A stretch of 64,000 bases of DNA from Stylophora pistillata. Lineage: Eukaryota. How positions within the stretch are numbered: the stretch's first letter is position 1; each line of letters starts with the position of its first letter. Below, piece after piece: positions 31,019 through 50,109 of the stretch. Location: the NCBI RefSeq assembly GCF_002571385.2, contig NW_019217863.1, forward strand, positions 255,371 to 319,370, given 5' to 3'. The translations under genes were made by a program, and so were the position numbers. The notes under the pieces were generated by a model, which worked only from the letters and a program-made list of their open reading frames with translations, had not been told where the DNA came from and ran no database searches.

Positions 31019-31916
31019 CGTACCCACTCATCCGCAGAGATGTGGCAGATGGTTGAAAACATGGGGCGGTTATTTTTATGTAAATGACCTAGGCTACATT
31101 AGAGATCAAAGCTCTCTTCACCTGTCTCAAAATTTGACAAATAAACTACATTGGTCTTTATTTTTCCTTCCTCCTGAATGGACAGTTAATTTTCTTCGGT
31201 GATGTTAATTCTACTAAACATTAAACAGACATCTACTGTGGCAATAAGATAGTCACCGGGAAAAAAATGTAAATTCTCTCGGAGATGAAGTAAAAAGGGT
31301 CTAGTCAAGTAATGTCAAATTCCACCTTCAGTAAAATCGATCCTACAATATTTAACGAAAAGATTGGATTACACTTTAAAAACATTTAAGCAATTAATGA
31401 ATATTTGCTCGATCGGCGTGTCTATTATTTTCGCAAGTAACAAACTAGTCTGCTGTCCAGCCGACCAATAAGAACTTAGGACTAAGAAAAAGTAATTGTC
31501 TCTCAAGAAAAGATTCACGTAGCTTCAACCAATAAGAATTTTCCCCGTCCAATAATCAAGTAAAATCAACTGAGCTTTTAATTTTTCCCCCTAACATCCT
31601 TTTATTTCAAATTAGTCAATAATTGGCCCCGAAAGATCCTGCTTTTTTGATATCGCACTGAACTATTTTTTCCATCTGCACTGTAAATAGAAAGTTCGAT
31701 TTCCGAGCCTGAGCGAGGAGCGCGAATAGCGCCACTCTTTTGTAGGCACGAAGCAAGGACTGTGTTTTATTTTACCTAATTTTTTGTCTTTCTGGTAATG
31801 CGTAATGGCTTAGATGACGATGGAAAGTGTTTTAATTCTCATTCGCGAAAACAAATAGTTATATTAAAAAAAAAAGGAAAAAAAAAAAAAAAAAACAGCC
31901 GCAAACCCTTCCGGTG

Positions 31917-32777
31917 TTAAAAGCATTTAGCGTTTGTCATGGCTAATATCTCTGATGCTTGTTTTCTTGCTTCCTTGTCTATCACTAGAAACATTTCATT
32001 GCCAAGCCGAACCCTTGGTATGTTTTTTCTCTTTAAACCAACTCTTCTTTTAACGCCGATCTTCTCGTAAAAGGCAACCAACTTATTTTTGCAGCCTCCG
32101 ATAATTTCGATTGCTCCGAGACCGGAAGCTACTTGTAGTGCATATGCACACATGCTCTTGCCCAGGCCCTGACCACGAAACTCGGGCTTTACAACAAGGG
32201 AGGACAGTGTAACGTTATGAACTATACTTGATGTAGGCGTCTCCACAATTTCAGACTCGCTGATATCTTTCGCACTTAGCACCGATGAATCTAAACCTGC
32301 AACCTCCATAGACTGTTGAACCGCGGGAAGCGGCAGTCTCATCCTCAGCATTCTTAAAAATTTATTTAAGTCAGGTGACCTGGAGGCGGAAGTCTCTCGT
32401 AAAACACAATGAGCGATAACTTGCTTCACTCCACCGAACGTGGCCAAAGCAACCAAATGACAGGGGAAGGTATCACGTGATTCGATCATACTGGATGTCC
32501 GCACATAGTTGGGTTCCTCGATACCCTCCGCGGTCACAGGGACGGACCACTCTGACGTCACGAGAGCTGTCGCAGCGTTGGTGTACTGTGGCACGGTGTG
32601 AAGTTTGTAAAACTCTACACTGCTGATACGAGCAACATGGCAGTGGTCATAACAAAACCAGGAGATGGCTATGGTTAAAATGGCCACACCCCAAGGGACA
32701 CTGTACCGCATGACTATAGCCACACTCACAAGTACCACACAAAACATCAAAAACGACAAATGTTTGCTGGTTGCCAT
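31917..32777 (-). CDS. GNAT-family N-acetyltransferase, NAA80-like, with N-terminal hydrophobic segments; CDS in one exon (alternative in-frame ATG at 32810)
   Basis: Acetyl-CoA-binding motif VVKPEFRGQGLG and AFYEKIG; accATGG Kozak context at 32777; splice acceptor just upstream at 32825. Confidence 0.8.
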   Translation of the reverse strand: MATSKHLSFLMFCVVLVSVAIVMRYSVPWGVAILTIAISWFCYDHCHVARISSVEFYKLHTVPQYTNAATALVTSEWSVPVTAEGIEEPNYVRTSSMIESRDTFPCHLVALATFGGVKQVIAHCVLRETSASRSPDLNKFLRMLRMRLPLPAVQQSMEVAGLDSSVLSAKDISESEIVETPTSSIVHNVTLSSLVVKPEFRGQGLGKSMCAYALQVASGLGAIEIIGGCKNKLVAFYEKIGVKRRVGLKRKNIPRVRLGNEMFLVIDKEARKQASEILAMTNAKCF

Positions 32778-35700
32778 GGTGCGATTTCCAGGTGTATACC
32801 GCCACTTCATTTGGCACAAGATTCCTGGAGAAGGGAAATAAAAATGTAGAATAAAGAAACCAAATGTTTTGGTTTGGAACTGTTCATTTTTTATCGTCTG
32901 TGCTGGCCCCGGTGGGATGCGAGGGTAGGGGAGGGGCGGGTGGAGGATATTGGTTGTGTCACAATCAATTTACATGATCCCCCCTCTATAAAGCTCTGCA
33001 ATGGCTTATGATATCAACTTATTAGCAGTTCACTAGCAGTCAATTATTTATAGTCCCCCTTTATAATCTGTCGGTGATGACTGTTCCCCTTCTCCGCTCC
33101 CCCTGAGAACCATGTGATCACCGAAACCTCACCCAGGTGACAAATAATATCAGTTCCTTACGACAACAACTTTTAATTGACACAACACGTGCGTCTGCGG
33201 AGAATAATTCGACTCACGTGCAACCAAAACTTCTCCTTACTAATCTGAAGTTGTGATCCTCACTAGAAAGGCGATCTCGAAATCTCACTCATAGAAATAG
33301 AAAGTAGTACAATAATTCGACTTTTTCGAAAAATCTCGTGCATTTCCTCGACGAAGTTATTTGAGGTCGTCTTTCGAATGTTACATGTTGCAAGCTCGTG
33401 CACGCATCTAAAATTATTTTGCGCAACTTCTGTGCGGAGAAGAGGAAAGCCGGATAAACTGGCATCCTGATTCATTCCTAGGCGTGGCTGCTCAAGTCGG
33501 AGTTTTCGTGTGGTAACAGAAAGACCCACAAGCCATGTAACTTTTCCACACACACACACACACACTACAGACACTGGCAACGTTTTTCTATGAGAAGAGT
33601 TCTTAAACCGCTTTGGATTGTCTGAAACAGTTACTCAACACGAACGTATCAGTGCACTGGGGATGACCAAGGTTTCTAAGAGTAGCCACCGAAGGTTTGC
33701 ATGCAATTTTTGTTTTTCACATGTATAAGATGAAAGATAGAAGTTTTTCTAGAAAAGACCACGTCAGTGCCGCACGAAATTGCGTGCATATTTCCTGGCT
33801 ACGCCTCCCTTGGCTCTGCTTGTATCTTACACCCGTCTTCATGCCTGGGGGGGGGGGGGGAGGAGAATCTCCCTCGACTAAGGAAGGGGTGGGATAGAAA
33901 CTAAGAGTCAAAATTTTTCGTAAAAATGACCCTAATATGATACATTCCTGGTGTATAAACAAAGTTAAATCAAACAAAATCACACTTATGATGTTCTCCG
34001 AACTTCGCGTAACTTACAGACAGTCCTTACAAAGTAGTTTTGGGCAATTTGGGAAAAGGGAATCCATGTATCGATAGTGCCGACAAAGGTTTCATATTTC
34101 TACACAGATATTAACCTGTGACCGATCGGCTTAACGGTTAAGTTTATTTCTGAGACAAAATGTGTCAAAAACCCTTTTTGTTTCATTAAGTTTAGTTAAG
34201 CTTTTATGAACCAGCTTTTTAAATGACAAAATTGTACGAGACAAGCAAAAGTCTGATTACTGAATAGAAAGCGGCCGAGAAATTAAGGATCTTGAACACC
34301 ACGCCATAAAAATGACTTGACAGTGGCCGGCTACCTTCTACAACAACGGATTAAGCCAAAATAAAAATCACTTCCGACGCGTCTCAAGAATTAAGAATTA
34401 CGGTTAGCTGGCGCAATACACTCATTTCCTGGATTAACGACAAATTGGGCTTGTCGCAGTAAATAATAAACTTTCCTCGTTTACTGAGTAAACTAAAGGT
34501 AACTTACTTCTGTGAATCTAACTTGCACAAATCAAATGAACATGAAAAAGAGAAGCAAGAACTTACTTCTCTTGGTTCCAAATATACCAGATTTCTATAA
34601 GAAATTTCTGAGCATATGGTTGAGAAACCGAAAAACAAGCGAGGAATTATGTGTTTGGATAGTGCTTTGGATTTTATTTTAATTTGAAGCAAACGTCTGA
34701 CTCTAAGTCCTGTTTCATGACCTCCTCTGCAGGCCCTCCCTGCTTGAGGAAAGACTCGGATTGCACCCCTCATGTTCTTACATGTAAACAACAGACGTAA
34801 CAGTATCAAATCTTCATCTACTATCCTTCTTAGGTTCTGTCGTTGACAGTTTCATGGGTGAAATAAATACCCAGTGGACGTGACCACTAATCTATGAGGA
34901 AAACAGATGACTTTTTAGCTAAACAATTACAGCATAAAATCCACTAGGAGAAAGCCCTTATCTGTCCCAAGTTTTAGCTCCGCATTTCTTTTATTTTTTT
35001 TATCTTTCGTTCTCACGACGGTTAATAGTTAATACTAGCGAAGAGGGGAACTCACCGAGTGTTCTTTTAAACTGACTGAACCCTGGTGCAAGAGAGAGAG
35101 AGAGAGAGAGAGTATTCGGTCACATGCCACACAAGGGCTTTATTGTGACTCACATGGCGTTGCTGGAGGTTCTGACTGAGTTATTGTTTTTGGCTTTGTT
35201 TGAAAAAAGATTAACAGCTAAGCCTCATTTGAATAAAGTCTGTTGGGACAAAAATTATAAAGACTGCTTTTTAAAGAAACACTTTAGCATTATGATAATA
35301 ATAAGAGAGTAAGTGAAACGTTATTGCGGTTTATGGCTAAGTTGAAAGTGTAAACAAGCTTCATCAGAGCGCGCGCCTTTAGGGGCCTTCAGGGGCCCTT
35401 AGCGGTTTTATACATTAAGCTAGATCACGTAGCATCCCTTAAAACTCGGAAGATCTTATCCGGAGCTTGTTTTTTCTTGTCTTTTCTCTTTCCCTAGTAC
35501 AATTGTGGGGCATACTAATCCCGCCGAAAGCACTGGGTCTTTGAAAAATGAAATAAAATAAAGTACATCAAAACGTAAAACATTTTCCTTTTCCTTAACA
35601 GAGGGCTATTTCACAAGTAAAAGAAACAAAACGCGCGTGACAAAATAATTCCTTTTCCGCGTCGTTTATTGGATTTCCTTAGCCATCTTTACCGACTCCG

Positions 35701-36520
35701 CAAATGCCCCCCCAGATGTCCGGCAATGGGTAAAGTTTGTTCGCAACAGAAAGTCGAACTGACTGACCCCCTGATGAGTAGGTTATGAAATGTTTCCGAG
35801 TGTCTGGCGGGTTTCGACATGCCTTTGAAAAAATCCTAATGCGATTACTGGCCTATCCTCTAAAGTTCATGCGCAGGAAAAGAAAGGAAAAATGAACAGC
35901 ACGATGTCAGAAAAAAACATTTCCTCTTCTTGCGGTCACAAGACACTGCATAGATATTGACGCACGCGAGGACAGGAAATGACTGTATTGATCTACGCCA
36001 ATTCTCAGACAAAATGCATCGTCGAACAGTGCATCAGATTTTGTTGACAAAAAAAAAAAAGAAAAGAAAAAATAAGAAAATTGCAACGAACTCTTGTGAA
36101 TAGAAGTTAACATTTTGAAAAATTCCAAGACCCGTCCTTTCCCTTTGAGGCATAAATCGCGAATCTCACGTGAAGGAAAAGGAAAAGAAACCAGCAGGTA
36201 TTTTTTGTCACTTCTAGTCAACTTGTCATAAAACCGGTTTGACGATCTTGTTTTTTCGTTTTCATCAACTGAAAGAACAGCTTTGTCATGCTTGTATCTG
36301 ATTGGTTACCTGAAAAACTCTTTGGGTGACAGCCAATCAGAAAAGGGGCGTACGTGGGATTGAGAGGGGCGGCAACTAGGCGTACAACACGCAATTCGAA
36401 AGTATATTTATCAACGCAATCGAAGAGCCCACCATGAATTTTATCGGCTTCTTCCTCGTTTTCTTGTAAGATTTCGCCTGAAATTCCCATTGTGAAAAGT
36501 CAAGAGGATAATTTTCAGTC

Positions 36521-39500
36521 ATGACTGAAGCTCAAGATCTAAATTTGACGTTTTCTGGATGTGGTTTTTTGGGAATTTACCATCTAGGAGTTGTGTCGTG
36601 TTTGAAAGAAAACGCTCCGGCGCTCTTGAAACGAGTAAAATGTTATGGCGGCGCGAGCGCGGGTTCCTTCGCCGCGATTGCGTTGCTTTTAGACTTAGAT
36701 GTTAGTGACAGTGCTGAGTTTGTAATCAGACTGGCTAAAAGAGCGAATTCATTGACGCTTGGACCCCTTCATCCAAGTTTTAATGTCGTCAGAACACTTC
36801 GTCGATCATTCGAAAGGATTCTGCCACCCAACGCACATGAACTCGCCAGTGGAAGACTTCATCTGTCGTTAACAAGAGTTTCTGATCTCAAAAACGTTAT
36901 TGTGTCTGAGTTCTTCTCTAAAGAAGATCTTGTTGAGGTGAGTTGTTTCGTAATAATCATCTATGTCGCAAATTCATTATCTTCAAACGGATTTATAGTC
37001 GCTCGCGCTGAAGGGAATTTGCATAGAGTAAAGCCACGGTCGTTCCCAGCCAGTTGTTCCCCTTCAAAACAAAAAATCGTCAACAGGGACCTTTTATCGA
37101 CCTACTTTTCACGGCTATAAAATTCTGTAAGGTTTCTCGCGTGCTTTTCGTTCGGAGCGTGGTATTTTCCAGTTGCGTAATATGAAACTCTGTGATGAAA
37201 CTCCGTAAGAGCGACTCTACGATCCTATTTTCATGAAAAGGATATGTTAATTTTTCTTTTTTTTTTTTTGAGTTAAGGAACTATTTCTGTAATGAAGGCT
37301 CAGCCGATGTCTGTTGCTCACATAATTTATTCGCGCGGCAAGTTGGAGTTTGTCTTTGTGATGATTGTGTGTAAAATAATAATGAGCTAAACGCGTCGCA
37401 TTTTTTGAGGATTTGTTATGGCTACAAGAGTATTGTCGTGCTGTTGAAAGAGGATTTGGAAATATTTTAGAGCACAAGCCCCACCATATCGATCTATTTC
37501 CTACATTACGGTAATAAAAACTTTTGCTGTATAAGGCACTCAGTTGCTTATTTATGCTAACTTTTCAATGTTCCTGACAGTCCAGTATTTGTAATGATAT
37601 TAATCATTCATTTGCTTGGTATTTGGATGGCATGCTGTAACTTGCCAACGGTTAACTTGATACTAGAGAAATTACAATCTGTCTACCTATTGGAGGTGGA
37701 AAGTTCTGCTCACATCTGTTGAATTGTTATTGGTCTAGTGCGGCACATGCCAAAAGAGATTTGATGCATATATGAATAAACATGTAGTCTCATCTTCGTA
37801 ATTTGCATCATCTCGTTTTAAAGTGAAAATCTCAAGCAGTGTTTATGACAAATACAGTATAATTTGTAGATAGTGCAAGAAATTTGATGCCATCAAAGGC
37901 AGTCTCATGGACTATCACCAAGAGAAAAATAGATTGTAGGAATTTTAAAAAGACTGTATACCTTGGTATTGGGTGGTCAAAACCCCCCACAATCTCATCT
38001 CAAGTTGCATTCCATTGCCACCTCTAAAACTCAAGTTATGTAACTGACAAATTAGCTGGTTGATTTTGGATTATCACCAATCTGTAGACATCTAGGAGTT
38101 GTTCCCAGCTCTAAACTGTTGATTCGAAGCATTAAAATCCTAACAAACCATTTCAATTAGAATTTCCTTAGTCAGACAGTACTCATGTACACCTTATACC
38201 ATCTGTTTCCAACAATGTCCATTTTTCTTTTTCTTTTTTTTTGTGTGTGTGGGTGTGTGATGAATTTTGCTATCAAGGATAGGTGTCATTTCCAAAGACA
38301 GTTCTGAAACAGACATTTTTTAAAACAACTACTGCTGTAACAGTTATAAAGCGAAATATCTCTGACAGATTCATAATTCCTAAATGATGAATCAATGCCT
38401 CCTTGTGCTTAAATCAACAGAAGGGGGATCTGTTGCATCACCTTACTGATGACCTCCCACCCAAAACTCCTCATTTATGTACAAGTACCTGTATATAAAT
38501 TTTAATTATTCAAGACAATGACTGTTAGGTACTTTATCTTTTGTTTCAGGCATTGATTGCTAGCTCCTATGTTCCGTTTTACTCCGGAATCTTTCCTGCA
38601 AAATTCAGGGGAAAGGTAAATATTAACATGATGTCATGTGCTTTTATTAAAGTTTCCTGTTTTTCCTTAATGTTGAGTGAGATAAGGTTACAGGATTAAT
38701 TATCTTAACTAAATATGTGGGGCTCAGACATATTTATTGATAGGTATTAAACAAGATTTTCTTTTCAGTGGACAGTCAATCACATAAAAGAAAATAAAGT
38801 TAAAAGATTTATTTGGAGCACAGTCAGTGTCTTGTATCATGGATGCACAAGGGCTGTAATGTCAGATGCGCACTGAATTCTATTTTTTAACTTCTTTTAA
38901 AAGTGTAAAGGGGATGATAATGGAAGATCTACATCTTGAAAATCTAATCTCTATGATCAGCAGTACAACTACAGAAAATTTCCTTTTAGTGGCAATATAT
39001 ATCTTGTGTAACAGAGTTATTTCAGGCAGTTTCAGATGGCTATTGCCCACCTAAATCCCATAAACAAATTGAAATACTGAAGAGATTATTTATAATAAAA
39101 TTATCTGTTAGACAAGATGTTATTGTTCAGAATACTCTTCTGTTTGTGGAGTTCAGCTTGCACATTACTAGACACCAAAACTTGTTTCTAATTGACTGAA
39201 TTGTGTTTTCAGTACTATGTAGATGGAGGAATTTCAGACAATCTCCCACAGCACTTCAAAGAAGGAGAAACCATAACAGTTTCACCTTTCAGTGGAGAGA
39301 GTGACATCTGTCCCAAAGACAGTTCTTCAAATGACGTTCACATTGAACTTCGAAATACCAGCATGCAGTTTACACTACAGAACCTCTACAGGTGTTCCCG
39401 TGCATTCTTTCCTCCACAACCAGATGTACTCTTTGATATGTGCAAGCAAGGATACAGAGACACATTGAGATTTGTGAAGCAGCATTGTAAGTGGATGTCT

Positions 39501-41251
39501 CTAAATGCACTGTTTCAATTCAAAGTATTCTTTGTTCGTCTTTTGTTAATTAGTTTAGGAACTTGGGGGGTGAGGTTTGGTAATTATTATAATTTTACAG
39601 CCATCCTCATTATCATCACTACTGTAAAGCTGTAGAAGCCTTGAATTTGAGTTGTAACATAGGTATGACAACTTGAAGCAAGTTTACAAGTGCATTGCAA
39701 GCGGTCAACAAGTAAATGTAACACATTGACAGATAATAGACAGTCAATCAAGGCATTATGTATTGTTCTTGTAACTAGTTCAGTTGAAACTAAGTGGACT
39801 GGTGATTTTTTTCCAGATCCAGAGACCCTAAAGAAGGTACCAGTGCACAGGCCTTCCATGTCTCAGTATCTTCCCTCATCTTGGTCTAAGTCAAGTCATG
39901 GAATAGACAAACGACAAATCAGTGTCAGCACACTGTCTGCTTACACCTCATACAGTAGTGGAGAGGGAGATGTTTTTACAAGTTCCGAAAGTGAGGAAAC
40001 TGAGAATGAGGAAGGAGAGTCGAAGCTGACCATCAGTAAGTTCATGTTACCTGTTACCTTTAAGTTGCTAATATCAGTATGCTTATTCTCAGACTGTTCT
40101 TCACACATTTCCCATAGTACCACAAGGAGAATTTGTGCAACATGAATAACTGCTTTAGTTGGTGATCATTTCCTTTATTCTTTTGACCTCAATGTGTGAT
40201 ACAGGGTTGATGTTAGATGCTAGTCACTTTTAGAATTTTGAGAACTTCAAACAACAGAAGAATGTGGAATTACTTCATTAAACTCCTGTAAGAAGTAAAT
40301 CAATAATACGTACAGTTAAATTTCACATGTATATAATATGGAGAACCATTCTTTTAATTCTTGAATATCTATTTTTTTACCAGTACTTCATCGCACAAGT
40401 GAGGCTGTAAATGAGGCAGAACTTTGGTCATGCTTCTTCATTCGCCGAGTGTTTTGGGTGTTAAAACTTGCAACAAAACCATGTGTGATTTCTCTGAAAC
40501 AGATCTCGCATCTTGCAAACATGTAAGTTTTTCTTGGTGTGCACTGCCAATATTTGGTTGGAGACTTTGAATAAATCTAATTCTTGTTATTTTTCTTTCC
40601 TTCAGAATCCTAGAATCACTACCAAAAGTGGAGAAAACAGGAAATGAGTTCCTTGATGAACTGTTATCTATGGTCTACATGGTGATACATACTTATCAGG
40701 ACAAACATCAAGTCCAGTGCTGGTAGGTATTCTTTGGATTGCAAACAAAATATTGCCACTCTCATATGGACACCACCATTCAGCAAATGTGTTTATTTCA
40801 ACCTCTGAACACTGGACTTAAACTGTGCTTACATTGGAGATGGATTAACTAATTCTCTTCTGTTTTCTTTAGGAAAAAGCCTGGATGTGCCATAACTTCA
40901 GGACAGTGGCAGAAGGACATCAGTCCCATAGATGAAGAAAGTACTAGTGACATTGATGTAAGGCAAGTCAAGCATCTTGATGATGATAGTGACATCGAAG
41001 TTTTGGATGCAGAAAATGCAGAAAGCTTAATCCAAAGTGCAATGAGATGGGAAGATAATGTCAATAACAGCCCTTTTATTACTGCCAGTGATAGGCGCCG
41101 CAACCGGAATTTGGAAAGAAGACAGAGCCAAGGATCAAGTAATGTAGAGAAAGCACTTGAGGTTTCCTGTGATTATGTCATCTTAGATGGTTATGAGACT
41201 GATGTTGAATCTGAGTTCAGTGGTACTGAAGAACTCCAGGAGTGCTTTTAG
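36521..41251 (+). CDS. PNPLA2: Patatin-like phospholipase / ATGL-like lipase, copy A; exons 36521-36937, 38550-38615, 39213-39486, 39817-40035, 40384-40522, 40606-40722, 40873-41251
   Basis: GCGFLG oxyanion loop, GASAG nucleophile elbow and YVDGGISDN; continuous spliced frame with GT-AG introns. Confidence 0.88.
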
Positions 41252-43267
41252 TGCCTCTTGCACAAACTGCTGTGGTCTAATTACCGAGAGCTATTGATGA
41301 GAATTTTTATTTTTATTGAGTAGAATCATAGTGGTCTTTGACATGATTTTGTAATCATGGGTAAAATCACTGAGGGTTCTTCCCTTAAAACAAAAAAGAA
41401 AAGCAAAATAAAAAAACAGAAACAAAAAACAGACAGCATCAGGCTTATTTTGTCCACAATGTGTATGGGATACTAAACTCAGACATGAGATCAACACATA
41501 TTTATGGAAAAAATATAATATGTATTAATAGTCACCAAGGTAACTCAGATCTCAGTGGAAAAACAAACCTATTTAAAATTGGCAAGAAATTTTTTATATG
41601 GTTTAATAATTCTTCGCTGGGCATGCCTTTGCCAGCTTATGCTTTAGTGTCGATGACTGAGTATTGTCATCTAACTCATGCAATAACTAAGCACATTATG
41701 TGAGAGATTTATTTTGTTAACAAAAAAAATTACAATGGGTCTTGTTTCAATTTTATTGAGAAATATACAGAGGGTAAAGATGTGTCCATTTTATTAAGAA
41801 TGCAAAGGGTAAAGTTTTATCCAAATGCTTTTTCCATGGTGTTGACTGGAAAGGCAAGCAATGTTGATGTACAGAAATTAATTTATTGTATAAAGATATT
41901 TGATTTTATTCTTCAGACTAGACTGCCGTTGAACAAGAATCATGATAGAATAGATTAGAAAAGTTTAAGTGATATATTATTGATAAAACCACTCAAATTT
42001 GAATTTGAGTGAGCAGCAAATAATTATGGCCTTGTTGCTGTAGTTCTTAAAAGTTTGCCAATGTTTTATGTATTTTATACTGAAAGGAAAAAGAAAATTT
42101 CCATTATTTTCATGTGATGTACAGTACTAGTCCCAGTAATGTATATAATTAAATAAAGAAAATTGCTTTGTGAATGAGAGTGACTTGACCTACTTTGCAA
42201 TTGTGAAATAGTTCAGAGTGCAAGCAAATCATTAATTAAAATAGTATTCAGGGGGTCTTTCCCCTGAGACAAGATGGGACCAATTTATCTCGAGATCATC
42301 TTTCTCAGGTAAAGAGTATTTGTGATGGTGTTACTCTATCAAACCCACATGCAATGCTTGCTGATTTGGTCTGTCTGCACAAGNNNNNNNNNNNNNNNNN
42401 NNNNNNNNNNNNNNNNNNNNNNNNNNNNNNNNNNNNNNNNNNNNNNNNNNNNNNNNNNNNNNNNNNNNNNNNNNNNNNNNNNNNNNNNNNNNNNNNNNNN
42501 NNNNNNNNNNNNNNNNNNNNNNNNNNNNNNNNNNNNNNNNNNNNNNNNNNNNNNNNNNNNNNNNNNNNNNNNNNNNNNNNNNNNNNNNNNNNNNNNNNNN
42601 NNNNNNNNNNNNNNNNNNNNNNNNNNNNNNNACCACACACACACACACACACACAAAAGAAAAAGAGTAAAAATTCAAGAACAAAAACGGTATTTGAAAA
42701 TGTTACATCATCAAGGATGAGAGTTGGAATAGTACAATAAGCCCCTCTTCTCTAGTATGGTACAGGGCTCTTGAAACGGTTCAAATAACCCACTAGGCTT
42801 CTAAACATACATAGCGTAAGTTTGTATGATTCTTGATTTTCAATATCTTGCAATCTATATCTCGCCTTGTTTTTCCACCGACCTTCAATGACCTATCTTT
42901 CGTTGAATACTCTTTCTGTGACCTTTAGACCTTGATTAACCTTCGCTGACCTTTACTCCTTGATTTACACAATACCACTGAAGTCGCACTCACAAAGAAC
43001 TGAAACGAGAATTTGGTAGTATCGGAAGCAAAATTTCACAAACAGACATGCGGTACCGGTTCATAAAAACTGGCGCGAAATCACAAGGTCGGTAAAGGTG
43101 ACTTCCGGTCATGTGAACAAATACCGTGATCCTCATTTATGATGTCATAATAGGCGGGCGATTCGCCCGATCGGCCCAGGAGTTATTCATTGCACTTGAA
43201 AATTCAGTATAGAATACATTCAGACACCTTCAACGGACAAACTGATGAAGATTGAAATTTTCTAACC

Positions 43268-46200
43268 ATGTCTAAGGTTCAAGATTTGAACCTGACTTTT
43301 TCGGGTTGCGGATTTTTGGGAATCTACCACATTGGAGTAATGTCTTGTCTAAAACAAAACGCGACCAGCCTTTTGGGTCGGGTGAAATGTTTTGGAGGAG
43401 CAAGTGCAGGTGCTTTTGCAGCTGTCGGTTTAGTGATGAACTTGGATGTCTCTGACATTGTAGAATCGGTACTAAGACTCGGGAAAAGAGCAAATTCTCT
43501 TTCACTAGGACCTTTCCATCCGAGTTTTCAGATCGTCAAAACTGTCCGGAAAGCGTTTGACCAAATGTTGCCTGACAACGCACACGAGATAGCGACTGGA
43601 CGATTGCACATTTCACTAAGTCAAGTCACTCTCACTGGCTTTAAAAATGTCATCATTTCTGAATTTTACTCAAAAGAGGATCTAATTGAGGTAAGCTAAG
43701 ATTAAAAGCTATATTGATGCTTGATGAACGAAGTATGTTCAATAGATTAAAAGAAAAAAAAGATCGCAGTGCACGATTTCGTTTGTTTTAGTTTAAATGT
43801 GCTAAATAACTCGTGTAACGTTCACCATGTGTATGTTTTGTTAATTGTTAGTTTGCTTTATTTTATCAGCTGAATAAAGATCGATCGTGCTATCAATCAA
43901 TTTTCAAGTCGATATTTTTCTGTCGATCTGAAAGGTGTTGAGGTCGAGAGTATTGAAGTTCAGAGCTGTTGACACTTTTATACACGAAATTGTAAAGTCT
44001 CCATACCTAATCTCTTCTTTTGATTGTCTTTTTTTAATGATTATTCATATTATTCATGAACGGAGTTATGTACCCCCACTCCAATTAAGCGACAACAAAA
44101 GTAAAAAACAGGTGACAATATCCTTGTTTTAAAATGCTCGTCGAGTCCAAACGTTTATAGTTGTCCGGAGTGAGATTTAGGCAGGGGGGAAGGGTAGGGG
44201 AAGAGCAGGGGAGTGGCAAGACGTTTTGTTTACCTCGGAATAGATGCCCAAACCATTATCGTTTTTTTCCTAACGAAATAATGACATTGTAGAATTTGAT
44301 GTCTCCTTTTTTGTTTTAAACTCTAAGAGTGACTAGCTAGCATCTAATTTCTCCTTACAATATCACCCCTAAATAACATTAAGATAACAAGAATAAAGAA
44401 AATGATCACCAGCTAGACAAGCTCTTGACTGGTAATCCTCCTTATTAAAACCATAGGAAATGAATGGAGAAAAGTATGAAGAATATGCTTTGTGATGTCA
44501 GGGTGTATAGGGTTAAGGATACAAAGATAACACTTATTTCGAGTCATTTTCAGAAGAACAACTCATTTTTTATTTAAAAAATTTAAATTAAATTACACAG
44601 TAATATTGAGTTTTATATTTGATTTTGTAAATATTACAGGCTCTTGTAGCCAGTTCCTATGTGCCAGTATTTTCTGGAATGTTTCCAGCTGTATATAGAG
44701 GGAAGGTATGTAACTGTGACTAACATACATAAAAAATTATGTTAAATATCAGTTAGGTGATTAGTCACCTCTACATATGTTGTACAAGATTGTCACACAA
44801 TACAAATCCTCTTTAAAATGTGAGACAAACCCAAAAACTGCTCTGTAAGGGACCATAGAGGAATATATTCTCTGGAGTGAAAATTACTTGAATTTTTACA
44901 ACTGACCAATTGCTAGATAATATAAATTTTATTTCTCTCAAATGTATGGTATACATGCATTATTTTCATTTAATTTCAAACACTAGAAATGAGTAGGTAT
45001 CACTAGAAAATAGAATTTACTCTTCTATTTACAGTACTATGTGGATGGAGGAATTTCTGATAATCTTCCACAACACTTCAAAGAAGGAGAAACTATCACA
45101 GTGTCCCCATTTAGTGGTGAACATGACATTTGTCCCAAAGATGTTTCATCAAATGAATTTCACATAGAATTACGAAATACAAGCATGCAGTTTACTGGAA
45201 GTAACATTTGGAGATTGTCCCATGCACTGTGGCCTCCAAGTCAAGAGGTTTTGATTGATATCTGCAGGCAAGGTTATAGGGATACGTTAAGGTTTCTCAC
45301 AGAGCATTGTAAGTTTCAATCAGTTGATATGTTTTCACATACTTCTGTTGGTTACCATTATGACAGTAATTCAATTAAGCACCCAACCATGAGTAAGTCC
45401 CCACCCTGTAGTTAGGAAAAGTAAGTAAGCACCCAGTCTTAAATAAGGGCCTTTCTAGTAGAAAAAGGACACTTCTGGTGTACCTGGCATGTTCAAGTAA
45501 ACCATTTCAAAAGCCTGGGAAAATGTTGACGAGTGGTCGATAAACCCTGTTGCAGTGGATTTTTCCTCCCTAAGTTCTAAGTTATGTTCACTCTGTATAT
45601 ATGCAACTCATGTATGAACACAGACAACCATTTTTAATCATAGATTGAAATGACTGTAATTTGCAATTAATTTTATTTTCCAGACCCTGATACACTAATG
45701 CTTGAGTCACTAACAACAGCTTCTATGGTGTTTGATATTCTGCCATTACACAGCAGTTCTCCATCTTATTGTCAAGGATCAAGCATTATTCAGGGAGCAA
45801 GCCAGAGTTCTGATTTATCATTTAATGACAACAATTTATCCTGTGATTATAAGGAGACTGGCTTGTGTCTTGCTCCAGGAAGCCATTGGGCTGAAACTGA
45901 ATTGGAGGAAGGAGAATCAAAATTATCCATGAGTAAGTGAGTCTTTTTATGTAATAATGCCCTTTTATCTGGGTATGAGTATCTATTGCTGCTGAATCAT
46001 AATTGCTAATGTTTTCTCAACTCTCAGTACTTTTGGATGCCAATAAAAGTGCAACAGAAGCTGAGCTTTGGTCATGCTACTTTTTGCGCAAGTCATGTCA
46101 CATCTTGGATCTTCTTGCCAGACCGTGCATCATAACTTTCAAGCAAATCTTGGTAATGCTCAAAATGTGAGTATGAATTGCAATTGATTTTATAAATTTA

Positions 46201-47878
46201 ATTGTTTATTAAATTGTAGTTGTACATGAAAATAATACCATTTTGTTTCAATGTTTAGCATAGGAGGACATTACTTTAATTTTAGTTAACTCAATTAGTT
46301 TATATAATTATTATAAGAAAAAGTTCACAATTTAGTTTTGGTTTTTGATTTGTTGCTTGATTTTCCAGAATTTTGCAAGCTTTGATTAAGATTGAAAAAA
46401 CAGGGTGCAAGTACTTTGATAACATGCTATCAGTTGTTTCCACAATGCTGCAGACATATGAGGACAAACATCAGGTTACAATACACTGGTATGACTTATT
46501 TCACTCTTTCAAAAATTCAAATTTTGTCTATCTGTTATACCCCTCTCACAGAGATATTTTTTTAGAGGTTCACCGACCCCTTTCCTGGAAATTCCACCTA
46601 TGCTTTATATCTTTCTTTATAAAGGTCTCATTTGGATTTTGAATTGATTGTCATTGAGAGCTGTGAACAACCTAGCTTTAGCAGTTAGGCTTCATTGTCT
46701 TAAACCCTCTAACTCTCAGAGGTTATAAACATGTCACTTCTTTCTATGATATCCATACATTATCCACTAAAAGGTAATGAGAATACTCACACTAATCTGG
46801 TAGAAGTTTCTATCTTGATCTCTTACCAAATTCTCATAGCTAATCTGAGTTCTATTTGTTGCCATTATTTTTAGGAAATCTAAATCTTTTATGAACTTGA
46901 CAGAAGAATCAACAGATGGTAAGATACATTTCTTGAATCATTGTTATTCTTTTTTCCAGATAAATATTAGAGTAGAATAAAATAAATGTTCAACTTGATC
47001 CTTTAACTCCATTTATTCTATCTCACTTGGTACAATCTGACTGAAAATAATAATCTGACTAGACGATCTGATTTAGTTTGGTATTAATCATAAGATCTGA
47101 TTCAATAACAAACTAGACCTCATGGTCCATACCATAATATGCAAACTAAACCCAGTGCCATGTGGGTAGGGCAGAAGCTAAACATGACGTATAGCAATCA
47201 ACAGTTAGTTGTTGAAAAACTACAGCAGGATGCCATGAGCTATTACTAAAAATATTAATATTTCTTTTTCATTTCTTCTCATTACCATCAAATCTTGATG
47301 ATCCAGACTCAAGGAAACTGGACTTAATAGTCTGGATACTCAAGAGTCTGCATAATCAAAAAATATAATATTAACAAGCCAAAAATAAAACTAAATTAAT
47401 TTTTCCAAAATTCCTTACAAAAAGTTATTAAAGCTTATGTTTGTTTCAAGTGGCAACAGTGTGTGCACATAGCTTTCACTGAAAAGCATTCAACAGCTTT
47501 CGGAAAGCCAGAGTTCCAACAGGAATTCCATTACATTAATCATGTGCCTTGTTTGATGGGAAAAAGTTGTTATGATAGTCAAATGTGAATAATTAATGTT
47601 CACAAAAATTTGGGAGCAGAGGAGTAAGTCCAGGTAATCTAAAAAACAGGATAATTTAGGTCTATGGCAGATAATCAAGGTTTTACTGTACTTTTATATT
47701 TTTAACAGTTGGAGAATCATCCCTTATTTTGTATGACCAGACACAAAAAGTTATCTCTGATGCCATGGAAGGACTTAGTACTGTTTACCAGAATGAACCA
47801 AGTATCTTGGTTAATGAATTCCAAGAAGGTTTTGATGAGAACATGGATGCAACAGAACATCCTGTTGACAATAGTTAG
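43268..47878 (+). CDS. PNPLA2: Patatin-like phospholipase / ATGL-like lipase, copy B; exons 43268-43690, 44640-44705, 45035-45308, 45684-45932, 46028-46166, 46369-46488, 46875-46918, 47709-47878
   Basis: Same catalytic motifs and the same first six intron positions as copy A. The last two exons are less certain. Confidence 0.82.
44318..44515. repeat. Dispersed ~200-bp MITE-like repeat; related copies near 10803-11005, 46702-46840 and 57518-57720
   Basis: Shared core CATCTAATTTCTCCTTACA..ATGATCACC..AGGAAATG..AGGGTTAA recurs in the window. Confidence 0.7.
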
Positions 47879-50109
47879 ACAAGCAAAAAACCAAGAGACA
47901 AGGATGATGATAGGGGAACACCTCTTTCTCTGTAATTAATGATGAAAGAAGCTCCCATATTGAGAGCAATGATGAGTATGTGATTCTTACCAGCTGAATG
48001 GACAAAAATTTTTGTCAACAATTTCTTATTTTTAATAGGTGACAAAAGCACCAACAGCAGAGTATGTAATTTATGAACAATGAGACCAAGAATTATTTTG
48101 ATTATCCTTTTGCATCAAGACAAAAATATTCATTCAGTATTTAAAATGACTTCTGCTTTTATTTGTTCAGAAATATCAAATCTTTTGGAAGGAAGTATCC
48201 TCTTAAGTTACTTTGACTTATACCTGATAATTTAGCAAGACAATGTGACTTGTGTTTTGTGTGTTCATTAATTAAAATAATTCTTCTATAAAGCCAGGTT
48301 AATGGTTATTATAAACTGTAAAGAAATCAAAATAAAGACAATACATATTATCTGAAATGGCTATTGTATATATAGGAAGGTAAATCATATTTATAAAGAA
48401 ATTGTGGCAATCAGTACTATTTCACAAAATGTTGTCTTTGTTCGGGCTGATTTACTGAAGGGAGAGCATTTATATCGCTGTTAGAATAAAGTGGATGGAT
48501 AACAGTACTGTAATAATGTGAATAAAATTGTTGCGACTTTCCTTTCAACTGAGTGATGTGATGATTTGTAAGAGATCAGTTATACAATGTTTATCACAGT
48601 TTTCTCAGCAGTAAAAGTATCTTGACAATTGTATGGTTAAGGGAGGGGGTTGGGCAGGTTGATGTGCATGTGATTCCTCTTTGCTGTGAAAACTAAAAAA
48701 TGTTTGTGATTAAAACATCCTATATGAGTTACTGACCAAGCATGAGGTCAAGATGGACCAAGAACAAGTCCAGGTCCATGAAATTGCAAAAAAAGAACAA
48801 AATATCCAGCCATCCAATGCAACTCGATCATAGTCATTGTCAAAAAACTGAACTTTGTTAAGTCATGCCACTCAATCTTTTTCTTGCACAAGATAAAAAC
48901 AGCCAAACTCTAGTGGGCAAGACTTTTTACTTTGCCCACTCAGATAACAAAGGATTTGCTTCATATTGCCCATGCGTGTCGCTGCCTGTATTATAAAGAA
49001 TTATCACCTCTAATAAGAGTTTGGTATGGGCACTCATAAAGTGGTCCAGCCAGCACTTAGTAAACCTAGCCATCTATAGCCGTACTTAGGAATACCCTGC
49101 CATCCTTAAGGACTGTGCTTAGAAATGACTACCTGTCTGGACCATATATATGTTCCTTCACCAAGTAGTTTAACCCCTCCCGGTTTCCATCAGTAAGTTA
49201 TTGTGGCAATCAAAAATTAATGGTGTTTGTAGACCTCTTTTAACCACTGTTACACTTAAAACCAATCATAATAACCCTGAATAACCTCGTTTCGAGAAAA
49301 AAATTTCGTTTCGAGAAAAAACCACCAAGTACCCTGCCATTTATTTGGAGATGATCATGCAAAGGCCATCCAGTGTATCTAAGCTAATTCTTCTAAGATC
49401 ACCGAGAGGAGGCAGGTTATGATACACATAACATTGTAGCAGTGGACGATTCTAGAAAGCATACAGCATGTACTTACAGGGTTTTGTCACAGCCTTCGCC
49501 ACCCTCTTCGCATAAGTAACCCTGAAACTGCAACAGTCATCAAGAGTGGTGGACTCTTTGATCTTCGCGTCTTGTTTGCACTGCATTCATCGTTTTCTGA
49601 AACCAAAGCTACTTCATTATTCACAGAGTATGCTGATAAAAAAAAATTACAGATCTATCATGCACAGGCAACATACTCAACATACTTTAGTATTGTAGTT
49701 TGCCGCTTTTCTGAAGAAGGTGTGAATTAACCCTTCCACTGCTGCGGACGGGGAGTAAAAAAATAAATAAGTAATTCCTTACCAGGGTAGCGAGGGGTGA
49801 ATGTGTCACTTTGGAGGAAATCATAATTTCTCACAAATAATTTCGGTTTAGGTCTCTTTGCTGCGGAATATTTAACATTTTGAGCAAAATAAGAATCAGT
49901 GGAATTTTATTTCACGAATTTTCGAAGAAGAGTGCCTCTCAGTCCCGTGGGGAGTAGGGTTAGGTTGGCCGTAATTTAAAAAGTGTTCAGCGGCAATTTA
50001 GTTCAGTAATGTTCCCGCCATTTTCGATATATACATTGGTTGAAATATTTGGTATCGAAAAGGTCATTGTGGTTGTGCAAGATTTCCCTTTTAGCTAGGT
50101 TCAAACGAT

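What the first reader, a model, noticed from the sequence alone, without database searches (positions are those of the whole stretch)
31917..32810. Membrane-anchored NAA80-like acetyltransferase with a WASH-complex (CCDC53-like) motif inserted in its catalytic fold
Seen: an intact ORF with two N-terminal hydrophobic stretches (LSFLMFCVVLVSVAIVM; VPWGVAILTIAISWFCY), a GNAT core, and a ~60-aa insert ahead of motif A containing PDLNKFLRMLRMRLPLPAVQQSMEVAGLDSSVL (32375-32277). Recalled knowledge: the core (LHTVPQYTNAATALVTSEW..SRDTFPCHLVAL..VIAHCVL) parallels NAA80/NatH, the actin N-terminal acetyltransferase (PELLDACADLINDQW..SSDAFPLCLMLL..VVGHARL). The insert parallels the C-terminal motif of WASHC3/CCDC53 (DPRYARYLKMVQVGVPVMAIRNKMISEGLDPDLL), also seen in some protist formins. 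Canonical NAA80 is soluble and engages profilin through a polyproline loop. Inference: two actin-linked modules plus a membrane anchor suggest an undescribed membrane-tethered (for example endosomal or symbiosomal) actin- or WASH-associated acetyltransferase.
Basis: partly seen in the sequence, partly recalled or inferred. Interest (0 to 1): 0.85.

Follow-up and report, generated by a model that had tools for sequence, protein, structure and literature searches.

The report
Membrane-anchored NAA80-like acetyltransferase with WASHC3 insert
A coral gene encodes a membrane-anchored relative of the enzyme that acetylates actin's N-terminus, carrying a small three-helix module otherwise found at the tail of WASH-complex subunit 3 and in arrays where protist formins normally have polyproline; this gives a testable lead on what that unexplained module does.

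Summary
Window 31917-32777 (-) is the single coding exon of an expressed, spliced coral gene of 286 aa, with a 5'-UTR exon 16.6 kb upstream.

**Anatomy**
- An N-terminal hydrophobic helical hairpin.
- A GNAT domain whose closest solved relatives are the actin N-terminal acetyltransferase NAA80 (Drosophila 5wjd E=8e-15, human 6nas E=1e-7, Foldseek ranks 1-3).
- A ~58-aa insert between beta3 and beta4 that matches the C-terminal motif of WASHC3/CCDC53 above Pfam's cut-off.

**Conservation and context**
- The architecture recurs in other corals, Nematostella, an annelid and marine protists, so it is not symbiosis-specific.
- The two DmNAA80 residues essential for binding actin's acidic N-terminus (W36, R43) are kept. 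Polyproline is absent.
- The genome has an ACTMAP homologue and acidic actin N-termini. No second NAA80-like locus was found.

**New here.** The inserted motif is an autonomous three-helix module. It forms arrays of about 6-11 copies exactly where FH1 polyproline sits in stramenopile formins.

**Best reading (about 0.5).** This is a membrane-anchored, cytosol-facing actin N-terminal acetyltransferase that uses the module instead of polyproline to capture (profilin-)actin. Complex prediction with actin gave weak support (0.54 against a best control of 0.21). Activity, partner and location are untested.

The parts
49478..49504 (-). 3' end of the non-coding first exon (5' UTR); its upstream limit is not determined
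   Evidence: The 27-30 nt that RNA contigs carry beyond 32824 match only here in the window. The exon is followed by a gtaagt donor.
32825..49477 (-). Intron 1, about 16.65 kb, GT...AG; it contains a patatin-like phospholipase gene on the opposite strand
   Evidence: The same junction is seen in contigs of three of the four runs laid, including both polyA RNA-seq runs; the fourth contig ends at 32824. Donor and acceptor were read.
31906..32824 (-). Coding exon as covered by RNA contigs; the 3' UTR probably continues below 31906 past a T-rich tract
   Evidence: Contig pieces span 31906/31913/31928 to 32824 in four runs. An in-frame TGA spans the splice junction, so the CDS cannot extend into exon 1.
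31917..32777 (-). CDS, 286 aa plus stop (an alternative upstream ATG at 32810 would add 11 aa)
   Evidence: ORF list; Kozak context and homologue starts; 100% identical database protein P0001.
32709..32759 (-). Hydrophobic helix 1 (aa 7-23 of the 286-aa protein)
   Evidence: The 15-aa-window hydropathy maximum of 3.07 falls here. AlphaFold helix, block pLDDT 82-85. Hydrophobic in all corals.
32649..32699 (-). Hydrophobic helix 2 (aa 27-43), followed by a basic flank in the family
   Evidence: The family consensus after the helix is rich in R/H/K, which by the positive-inside rule places the GNAT domain in the cytosol.
32394..32618 (-). NAA80-type N-terminal half of the GNAT fold (beta1, alpha1-alpha2 substrate loop, beta2, beta3)
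   Evidence: The only PDB proteins matching this half are NAA80s: 5wjd domain score 40.8 bits, and 6nas.
32547..32549 (-). Trp codon aligned with DmNAA80 W36 (contacts actin residue D2; W36A is inactive)
   Evidence: Alignment printed; invariant in 23 corals; role from PMC5924903.
32499..32501 (-). Arg codon aligned with DmNAA80 R43 (contacts D2; R43A is inactive)
   Evidence: Conserved in at least 90% of corals. Lys in Nematostella, not conserved in some distant members.
32217..32393 (-). Insert between beta3 and beta4 (~58 aa) holding the WASHC3-C three-helix module and an acidic/Ser-rich linker
   Evidence: In the profile alignment to DmNAA80, enzyme residues 69 and 70 are contiguous while profile positions 122-175 are skipped. 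AlphaFold helices at 148-156, 161-170 and 175-183.
32277..32375 (-). Core of the WASHC3/CCDC53 C-terminal motif
   Evidence: PF10152 30.2 bits, E=7e-7, the only family hit. Coordinates. Compared with the coral's own WASHC3 exons.
32157..32216 (-). beta4 and motif A (acetyl-CoA pyrophosphate loop, R-G-Q-G-L-G-K)
   Evidence: Pfam GNAT matches; alignments to GNAT structures; invariant G/L/G positions in the family.
31992..32021 (-). Family-specific, nearly invariant basic loop in the beta6-beta7 region (I-P-R-V-R-L-G-N-E-M)
   Evidence: Invariant columns P265, R268-M273. Low model confidence. Function unknown. This is the position of the polyproline loop in vertebrate NAA80.

Best explanation
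**What the protein is.** The gene encodes a membrane-anchored member of the NAA80 (NatH) lineage of GNAT N-terminal acetyltransferases. A short N-terminal hydrophobic hairpin (a single helix in some relatives) holds it on the cytosolic face of an internal or plasma membrane. The GNAT domain has an intact acetyl-CoA site and keeps the Trp and Arg that in Drosophila NAA80 grip the acidic second residue of actin.

**What it most likely does.** It most likely acetylates the acidic N-terminus of processed actin. Coral actin starts M-A-D-E-D, and an ACTMAP-type maturation protease is encoded in the genome.

**Role of the insert.** Vertebrate NAA80 uses an FH1-like polyproline loop to hold profilin-actin. 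This family instead carries, between beta3 and beta4, one copy of the three-helix module that ends WASHC3 and that replaces FH1 polyproline as tandem arrays in stramenopile formins. I infer that this module is the substrate-recruiting element, binding G-actin or profilin-actin.

**Shown and inferred.**
- Shown: gene model, expression, conservation, NAA80 affinity, module identity and its distribution.
- Inferred: topology, actin as substrate, ligand of the module.
For: **Gene model and conservation**
- The gene is real and expressed. PolyA RNA-seq contigs carry the spliced exon junction.
- There are 27 homologues at 52-100% identity, with 69% mean column identity among the 23 aligned.
- The same architecture occurs in Nematostella XP_001634129, Owenia CAH1778766 and MMETSP protists.

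**NAA80 affinity**
- The family profile hits DmNAA80 first among all PDB sequences (E=8.1e-15, 58 bits, both halves) and human NAA80 at E=1.2e-7. The N-terminal half matches nothing else.
- Foldseek ranks 1-3 are NAA80 structures (5wje E=6.4e-7, TM 0.70 on the target).
- W36 and R43 of DmNAA80, whose alanine mutants are inactive (PMC5924903), align to an invariant Trp and a >=90% conserved Arg.

**Pathway context**
- Coral actin begins M-A-D-E-D.
- An ACTMAP-like_C match scores 118 bits.
- No other NAA80-like locus appears, either with profiles that score DmNAA80 at 58 bits or among the 30 best GNAT loci.

**The module**
- PF10152 is matched above its cut-off.
- In this genome the motif occurs only in WASHC3 and in this gene.
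- The family profile (A1) hit 825 library proteins at E<=0.001; most of the best 150 match only its insert region, in several tandem copies.
- 30 of 55 multi-copy proteins scanned carry FH2.
- Arrays end 17-40 aa before FH2. The nine multi-copy proteins checked have no run of four or more prolines, apart from one PPPP in P0040.
- Human NAA80's profilin-binding stretch is itself FH1-like (PMC7864067).

**Topology and complex**
- A basic flank follows the hydrophobic segment.
- Complex prediction with actin: ipSAE 0.54 against a best control of 0.21, partner pLDDT 89, runs agreeing in at least 86% of contacts. The tool's verdict is weak support. The mark was reached by 51 of 78 solved complexes and 2 of 108 mismatches, but scores of 0.60 or under were reached by only 5 of the 78 solved complexes and by all 4 mismatches that passed.
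Against: - No activity, substrate or localisation data exist.
- The complex score is in the weak band and may reflect memory of the solved NAA80-actin complexes.
- DmNAA80 K73 (contact to actin D3) aligns to an invariant Val, and E87 to Ser.
- The R43 equivalent is Lys in Nematostella and is lost in some distant members.
- After removal of the initiator Met the coral actin N-terminus is Ala, a NatA substrate. A dedicated post-translational NAT is needed only if ACTMAP removes Ac-Ala.
- Absence of a canonical NAA80 rests on six-frame profile searches that could miss a gene split into short exons.
- The module's ligand is unknown. Its fold matches only generic three-helix bundles, and no paper was found on its function.
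- A membrane anchor is unprecedented for NAA80, whose substrate is soluble.
Confidence: 0.5

Rival explanations
1. It is an NAA80-lineage acetyltransferase, but actin is not its main substrate. It would be a membrane-resident N-terminal (or lysine) acetyltransferase for other proteins with acidic N-termini near that membrane, comparable in logic to Golgi-bound NAA60. The inserted module would recruit some other partner.
For: - The membrane anchor is conserved across the family, which suits a local substrate pool better than bulk cytosolic actin.
- K73 of DmNAA80 is not conserved.
- The beta6-beta7 region carries a family-specific invariant basic loop absent from NAA80.
- DmNAA80 itself acetylates other acidic N-termini in vitro and in yeast (PMC5924903).
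- The complex test with actin was only weak.
Against: - W36 and R43 equivalents are kept.
- The module's two other homes are both actin-assembly machines.
- The genome has an ACTMAP homologue but no other NAA80-like gene was found.
Confidence: 0.28
2. It is a small-molecule acetyltransferase of the glucosamine-6-phosphate (GNA1) or arylalkylamine type, as the automatic UniRef name of the Nematostella member suggests.
For: The C-terminal acetyl-CoA-binding half aligns well with GNA1-type and plant serotonin N-acetyltransferase structures (3fb3 E=2e-10, 7dai E=5.6e-9, 1i21 E=4.4e-7). The UniRef name is 'Glucosamine 6-phosphate N-acetyltransferase'.
Against: Those matches cover only motif A/B, which is shared by most GNATs. 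The substrate-defining N-terminal half matches NAA80 alone, and NAA80 is the best overall hit by sequence and by fold. A transmembrane anchor and an actin-machinery module have no place in hexosamine synthesis.
Confidence: 0.05
3. It is a catalytically dead scaffold. The GNAT fold would serve only as an actin-N-terminus or CoA-binding platform that tethers actin or another partner to a membrane.
For: The residue aligned to DmNAA80 E87 is Ser. The membrane anchor plus a binding module is an adaptor-like layout.
Against: - E87 mutants of DmNAA80 remain active.
- The R-x-x-G-x-G acetyl-CoA loop and its surrounding positions are invariant across the family.
- Strong conservation runs across the whole catalytic core.
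Confidence: 0.07
4. The CCDC53-like match is a chance or compositional resemblance of an ordinary loop insertion.
For: The match is short (about 39 positions), and the single-sequence E-value in the whole protein is modest (1.1e-5).
Against: - The score is above the curated cut-off in 24 of 27 family members and when the insert is scanned alone.
- The family profile retrieves hundreds of proteins through this segment alone, down to E=7e-73.
- The same conserved positions occur in the coral's own WASHC3 exons.
- The unit folds as a confident autonomous three-helix domain.
Confidence: 0.02

Closest known systems
NAA80 / NatH (NAT6, Drosophila CG8481), the actin N-terminal acetyltransferase
   Same: - GNAT fold. 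It is the best PDB match by profile (5wjd E=8.1e-15; 6nas E=1.2e-7) and by structure (Foldseek ranks 1-3).
- The NAA80-specific alpha1-alpha2 substrate region, with the W36 and R43 equivalents.
- An intact acetyl-CoA loop.
- It is the only such gene found in a genome that has ACTMAP and acidic actin N-termini.
   Different: - An N-terminal transmembrane hairpin; NAA80 is soluble.
- A 9-residue longer alpha1-alpha2 loop.
- A 58-aa insert with a three-helix module between beta3 and beta4.
- No polyproline in beta6-beta7, but an invariant basic loop there.
- K73 replaced by Val.
- About 18% identity to the solved NAA80 structures.
- Also present in protists, whereas NAA80 is described as an animal enzyme (PMC5924903).
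WASHC3 / CCDC53, small subunit of the WASH complex (Pfam PF10152)
   Same: The last ~40 residues of the Pfam profile (positions 108-146). The same conserved pattern (K-M-L-K-x-G-[LV]-P ... G-L-D-P-S-x-L) is seen in the coral's own WASHC3 exons on contig C90.
   Different: Nothing corresponding to profile positions 1-107 is present. By general knowledge of WASHC3, not tested here, that N-terminal part is the coiled coil that builds the protein into the WASH complex. In WASHC3 the module is C-terminal and split by an intron; here it is internal to an enzyme fold and uninterrupted.
Stramenopile formins with tandem WASHC3-C modules (e.g. Hondaea fermentalgiana GBG34259, Lagenidium giganteum DBA02399, Pythium insidiosum GLD93157)
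   Same: The same module, recognised by the coral family's profile at about 20-35 bits per copy.
   Different: In the nine multi-copy proteins examined there are 7-12 copies with a period of about 60 aa. In the five where FH2 was located the arrays end 17-40 aa before the FH2 domain, in the place of FH1 polyproline. They have no GNAT domain.
NAA60 / NatF, the Golgi-associated N-terminal acetyltransferase
   Same: It is a precedent for an N-terminal acetyltransferase held on the cytosolic face of an organelle, acting post-translationally.
   Different: It belongs to a different NAT lineage (Foldseek rank 18 only). By general knowledge, its anchor is a pair of C-terminal amphipathic helices rather than an N-terminal hydrophobic hairpin. 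It has no inserted module.

Membership tests
NAA80 / NatH | GNAT fold with a functional acetyl-CoA (Q/R-x-x-G-x-G/A) loop | tested here: met
   Pfam Acetyltransf_1 and Acetyltransf_7 above their cut-offs. R-G-Q-G-L-G-K at aa 200-207, with invariant glycines. GNAT topology in the model.
NAA80 / NatH | Specific sequence similarity to validated NAA80s, especially in the substrate-binding N-terminal half | tested here: met
   The family profile against all PDB sequences gives 5wjd as top hit (E=8.1e-15) and 6nas at E=1.2e-7. The N half is matched by NAA80 only.
NAA80 / NatH | Closest structural neighbour is NAA80 | tested here: met
   Foldseek ranks 1-3 are 5wje, 5wjd and 6nas (E=6.4e-7 to 1.6e-6). 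The model is only moderate (mean pLDDT 65.6).
NAA80 / NatH | Residues that bind actin D2 (DmNAA80 W36, R43; alanine mutants inactive) | tested here: met
   They align to an invariant Trp and a >=90% conserved Arg in corals. The Arg is Lys in Nematostella and variable in distant members.
NAA80 / NatH | Residues that bind actin D3 (DmNAA80 K73, S88) | tested here: not met
   K73 aligns to an invariant Val. S88 aligns to Ser in this protein but Ala in most corals. The alanine mutants of these residues only raise Km.
NAA80 / NatH | Profilin-binding polyproline stretch in the beta6-beta7 loop (most animals, not insects) | tested here: not met
   4% Pro and no PP dipeptide. The feature is described in PMC7864067.
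NAA80 / NatH | Soluble cytosolic enzyme | tested here: not met
   Two N-terminal hydrophobic helices, conserved in the family.
NAA80 / NatH | Binds actin and acetylates its processed acidic N-terminus | tested here: inconclusive
   Complex prediction ipSAE 0.54 against a best control of 0.21, the tool's verdict being weak support. Enzymatic activity is not testable with these tools.
NAA80 / NatH | Orthology (single NAA80-lineage gene in the genome; position in a phylogeny with validated NAA80s) | tested here: inconclusive
   No second NAA80-like locus was found.
WASHC3 / CCDC53 (PF10152) | N-terminal part of the profile (positions 1 to ~100) | tested here: not met
   Only profile positions 108-146 match. 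The true WASHC3 gene lies elsewhere, on contig C90.
WASHC3 / CCDC53 (PF10152) | Conserved C-terminal ~40-aa motif | tested here: met
   26.3 and 30.2 bits against a cut-off of 24.6. Present in 24 of 27 family members.
Glucosamine-6-phosphate N-acetyltransferase (GNA1) | Similarity over the whole domain, including the sugar-binding N-terminal part | tested here: not met
   GNA1 structures align only to aa ~181-244 of the profile (motif A/B).

The most novel reading that the evidence does not exclude
The C-terminal motif of WASHC3 is an autonomous three-helix domain that binds G-actin or profilin-actin. On this reading it is a second, non-polyproline solution to monomer delivery: used as arrays in place of FH1 in stramenopile formins, as a tail on the WASH complex, and as a single insert in an ancient membrane-bound NAA80. 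The membrane-anchored, module-bearing enzyme would be the ancestral actin N-terminal acetyltransferase, already present in protists. The soluble polyproline-bearing NAA80 of bilaterians would be a derived form.
Probability: 0.3. Interest if true: 0.85.

Novelty: new variant of a known kind. Interest (0 to 1): 0.7.

Why it matters
**For actin N-terminal acetylation.** NAA80 is described as a soluble, animal-specific enzyme that finds actin through profilin and polyproline. A conserved membrane-anchored relative would bear on three open points: where actin maturation takes place, how old the pathway is, and how the substrate is captured. This relative lacks polyproline, has a different recruiting module, occurs in cnidarians, an annelid and protists, and is apparently the only NAA80-like gene in a genome that has ACTMAP.

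**For the WASHC3 tail.** No function for this motif was found in the papers searched. Finding the same module in the FH1 position of formins and inside an NAA80-like enzyme gives a concrete, cheap hypothesis: it binds G-actin or profilin-actin. That can be tested with pulldowns and actin elongation assays, and it would bear on how the WASH complex and FH1-less formins feed actin assembly.

Tried and rejected
- **Symbiosome-specific role.** Rejected, because the family is in non-symbiotic Nematostella, Owenia and protists.
- **Membership in the WASH complex.** Rejected as an inference, because only the appended C-terminal module is shared.
- **ESM Atlas look-alikes.** Only generic bacterial GNAT clusters at 0.89-0.90; uninformative.
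- **PDB sequence search with the insert alone.** No hit at E<=10.
- **Fold searches with a confident model of three tandem modules.** Foldseek best E=4.7 and VIA-align best Z=4.7, all generic three-helix or HTH-like bundles. I looked for a villin-headpiece, UBA/CUE or WH2 relationship and found no support in Pfam at E<=10 or in the fold searches.
- **Literature.** No paper holds both CCDC53 and FH2. A formin-evolution paper does not mention the repeat. A 2026 CCDC53 preprint says nothing on the C-terminus. No paper names the family's accessions.
- **Word-indexed search with the broad family alignment.** It added no new taxa and no canonical NAA80.
- **The one other locus hit by the family profile (contig C227).** It is a NAT8/camello-like protein with a central hydrophobic segment, not an NAA80.
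- **Complex prediction.** Reported only as weak support. No interface was returned, so nothing can be said about whether the insert touches actin.
- **Exons kept apart.** For the complex test a database actin (P0211, N-terminus as in the coral exon bar one residue) was used instead of a joined model.


Full report
**1. The gene**

The minus strand of the window carries an intact ORF ending at 31917.

- **Transcripts.** Contigs from two polyA RNA-seq runs and two further runs of other studies cover 31906-32824. In three of the four runs, including both polyA runs, they leave the genome at 32824 with the same 27-30 letters.
- **First exon.** Those letters occur once in the window, at 49478-49504. 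There the minus strand continues with a gtaagt donor. A pyrimidine tract and AG precede 32824.
- **Gene model.** The gene has a non-coding first exon, a 16.65-kb intron and one coding exon. A TGA formed across the junction closes the frame upstream.
- **Start codon.** Of the two ATGs in the exon, the second (32777) has an accATGg context and coincides with the start of every homologue. This gives a 286-aa protein.

**2. A conserved family**

- The word-indexed search found 27 proteins of about 242-329 aa at 52-100% identity. One is named, from the stony coral Oculina patagonica.
- 23 of them align with 69% mean column identity and 58 invariant columns.
- A full profile search of 1.84 billion representatives added more distant full-length members:
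  - Nematostella vectensis XP_001634129;
  - the annelid Owenia fusiformis CAH1778766;
  - unnamed assemblies;
  - marine protist transcripts (MMETSP and metatranscriptomes).
- All the distant members aligned keep the insert, and most keep a hydrophobic N-terminus (absent from P0030, which starts later; below the hydropathy threshold in the protist P0135).
- In one distant member the neighbours, a patatin gene on the opposite strand and a glutathione peroxidase downstream, are the same as in the window.
- The family is therefore old and rare, and it is not tied to symbiosis.

**3. The catalytic domain belongs with NAA80**

- **Single-sequence searches.** These recognise only the acetyl-CoA half.
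- **Coral profile.** It matches Drosophila NAA80 (5wjd) through the N-terminal half, which no other PDB protein matches.
- **Broader family profile.** It puts 5wjd first of all PDB sequences (E=8.1e-15, 58 bits, both halves) and finds human NAA80 (6nas) at E=1.2e-7.
- **Fold search.** The AlphaFold model has moderate confidence (mean pLDDT 65.6). Its best Foldseek matches are 5wje, 5wjd and 6nas.
- **Substrate-contact residues.** In DmNAA80, W36 and R43 hold the second acidic residue of actin, and their alanine mutants are inactive. K73 and S88 contact the third residue. E87 is dispensable (PMC5924903). Using the printed alignment with an offset of +9:
  - W36 aligns to an invariant Trp;
  - R43 aligns to an Arg kept in at least 90% of corals;
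  - K73 aligns to an invariant Val;
  - S88 aligns to Ser or Ala.
- **Other differences.** The alpha1-alpha2 loop is nine residues longer than in the fly enzyme.
- **Acetyl-CoA loop.** It is intact.

**4. The insert is an autonomous WASHC3-type module**

- **Position.** In the profile alignment, residues 69 and 70 of DmNAA80 are contiguous while about 52 profile positions are skipped. In the model the insert lies between strands 128-139 and 198-207.
- **Identity.** It matches the last 40 positions of Pfam CCDC53 above the curated cut-off, in the whole protein and alone. Nothing else matches it.
- **Occurrence in this genome.** The family model finds only the true WASHC3 gene, as exons on contig C90 with the motif split by an intron, and this gene. 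The exon translations, read separately and not joined, show the same conserved positions.
- **Occurrence elsewhere.** The family profile (A1) hit 825 library proteins at E<=0.001. Most of the best 150 match only its insert region, with 3-12 matched stretches each.
- **Link to formins.** Of 55 such proteins scanned, 30 carry an FH2 domain; others are fragments. The named ones are stramenopile formins from Hondaea, Lagenidium, Pythium and Pinguiococcus.
- **Layout of the arrays.** The units repeat about every 60 aa. Where FH2 was located the arrays end 17-40 aa before it. The nine proteins checked have no run of four prolines, apart from one PPPP in P0040. The arrays therefore occupy the position of FH1.
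- **Fold.** A model of a three-unit protein gives each unit as a confident three-helix mini-domain, with block pLDDT 84-96. Fold searches return only generic three-helix bundles. No solved structure shares the sequence.
- **Literature.** I found no paper describing this repeat in formins or a function for the WASHC3 tail.

**5. Membrane anchor and topology**

- Residues 7-23 and 27-43 are strongly hydrophobic and are modelled as a helical hairpin.
- Some relatives have one helix only.
- The segment is followed by a cluster of basic residues in most members.
- By the positive-inside rule this places the GNAT domain in the cytosol, whether the anchor is a hairpin or a single N-out/C-in span. This is inference; no predictor or experiment was available.

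**6. Pathway context in the same genome**

- Actin exons encode an N-terminus M-A-D-E-D.
- A strong ACTMAP-like match is present: PF21646, 118 bits.
- Two family profiles, one of which scores DmNAA80 at 58 bits, find no other NAA80-like locus. The only extra hit is a NAT8-like ORF.
- An HMM of the NAA80-type N-terminal half, run without filters on six-frame translations of the 30 best GNAT loci, scores 113 bits on this gene and at most 9 bits elsewhere.
- A gene split into small exons could still escape these searches.

**7. Complex test**

- The cytosolic part (aa 55-297 of the longer form) was folded with a cnidarian-type actin from the database search, P0211 without its first Met.
- The score was ipSAE 0.54, 0.54 and 0.51, against 0.21 for the best control. 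Partner pLDDT was 89, and the runs agreed in at least 86% of contacts. The tool's verdict is weak support.
- The mark was reached by 51 of 78 solved complexes and 2 of 108 mismatches. Scores of 0.60 or under were reached by only 5 of the 78 solved complexes and by all 4 mismatches that passed.
- Because NAA80-actin complexes are solved, a pass may reflect likeness only.

**8. Mechanism**

- **Most likely (about 0.5).** This is a cytosol-facing, membrane-anchored N-terminal acetyltransferase of the NAA80 type acting on processed actin.
- **The parallel that motivates the module's proposed role.**
  - Human NAA80 holds profilin through a stretch that resembles the mDia1 FH1 motif (PMC7864067).
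  - Here, both an NAA80-type enzyme and formins lack polyproline and carry the same three-helix module instead.
  - I therefore propose that the module binds G-actin or profilin-actin (about 0.3-0.4).
- **Rivals.**
  - A membrane-local NAT for other acidic N-termini (0.28).
  - A scaffold without catalysis (0.07).
  - A GNA1-like small-molecule enzyme (0.05).
  - A chance motif (0.02).

**9. Novelty**

- The fold and chemistry are known.
- The combination appears undescribed: an N-terminal membrane anchor, an NAA80-type core and a WASHC3-C module inserted in the beta3-beta4 hairpin.
  - NCBI calls the members uncharacterised.
  - UniRef's automatic name is misleading.
  - No paper names them.
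- The formin arrays and the domain nature of the WASHC3 tail are by-products that may interest the actin field more than the coral enzyme itself.

Noticed in passing
window 30809-31027 (-): This is the first coding exon of a glutathione peroxidase with a signal-like N-terminus. It has an in-frame TGA exactly at the active-site position (V-A-T-F-TGA-G-Y-T), so it is a selenocysteine GPx. It lies directly downstream of the acetyltransferase on the same strand. The same neighbour (PF00255) follows the distant homologue P0029 in locus L016.
   Followed up: partly
window 36521-37120 (+), RNA contigs 36407-36938: A patatin-like phospholipase ORF (G-x-G-x-x-G and G-x-S-x-G motifs) starts inside the 16.65-kb first intron of the acetyltransferase gene, on the opposite strand. 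It is covered by RNA contigs in all four runs, with a splice-like break at 36938. A patatin gene is also the upstream neighbour in L016, so the trio patatin / acetyltransferase / GPx is syntenic.
   Followed up: partly
window 49505-49600 (-): The sequence just upstream of the evidenced end of the 5'-UTR exon holds several ATGs. At least two of them open short frames ending in a TGA before the splice site, so upstream ORFs are possible. The transcription start was not mapped.
   Followed up: no
window 32499: All four RNA data sets read G instead of C on the + strand. This is the third base of the Arg codon aligned to DmNAA80 R43 (CGG to CGC), so it is synonymous. One run has two further differences, at 32266 and 32747.
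   Followed up: partly
G000 contig C90, 402332-407934 (-); loci L002, L004, L005: This is the coral's true WASHC3 gene. The C-terminal motif is split by an intron at Pfam position 125, unlike the uninterrupted copy in the acetyltransferase.
   Followed up: partly
G000 contig C231, 119574-224053; also C347 and C227 (L015 1033-1821): At least seven GNAT ORFs of 236-260 aa are clustered within about 105 kb of C231, with more on C347 and C227. The C227 one is NAT8/camello-like with a central hydrophobic segment. This looks like a tandemly expanded acetyltransferase family.
   Followed up: no
G000 contig C28, 57138-58700 (-): Two actin matches (profile 2-82 and 114-410) are both reported with a 546-aa open frame, about 180 codons apart instead of about 30. 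This could be an actin gene whose intron stays open in frame, or an actin with a large insertion.
   Followed up: no
G000 contig C109, 407433-407798 (-); locus L017: A strong match to the ACTMAP-like C-terminal domain (118 bits). The coral therefore encodes a homologue of the actin maturation protease.
   Followed up: partly
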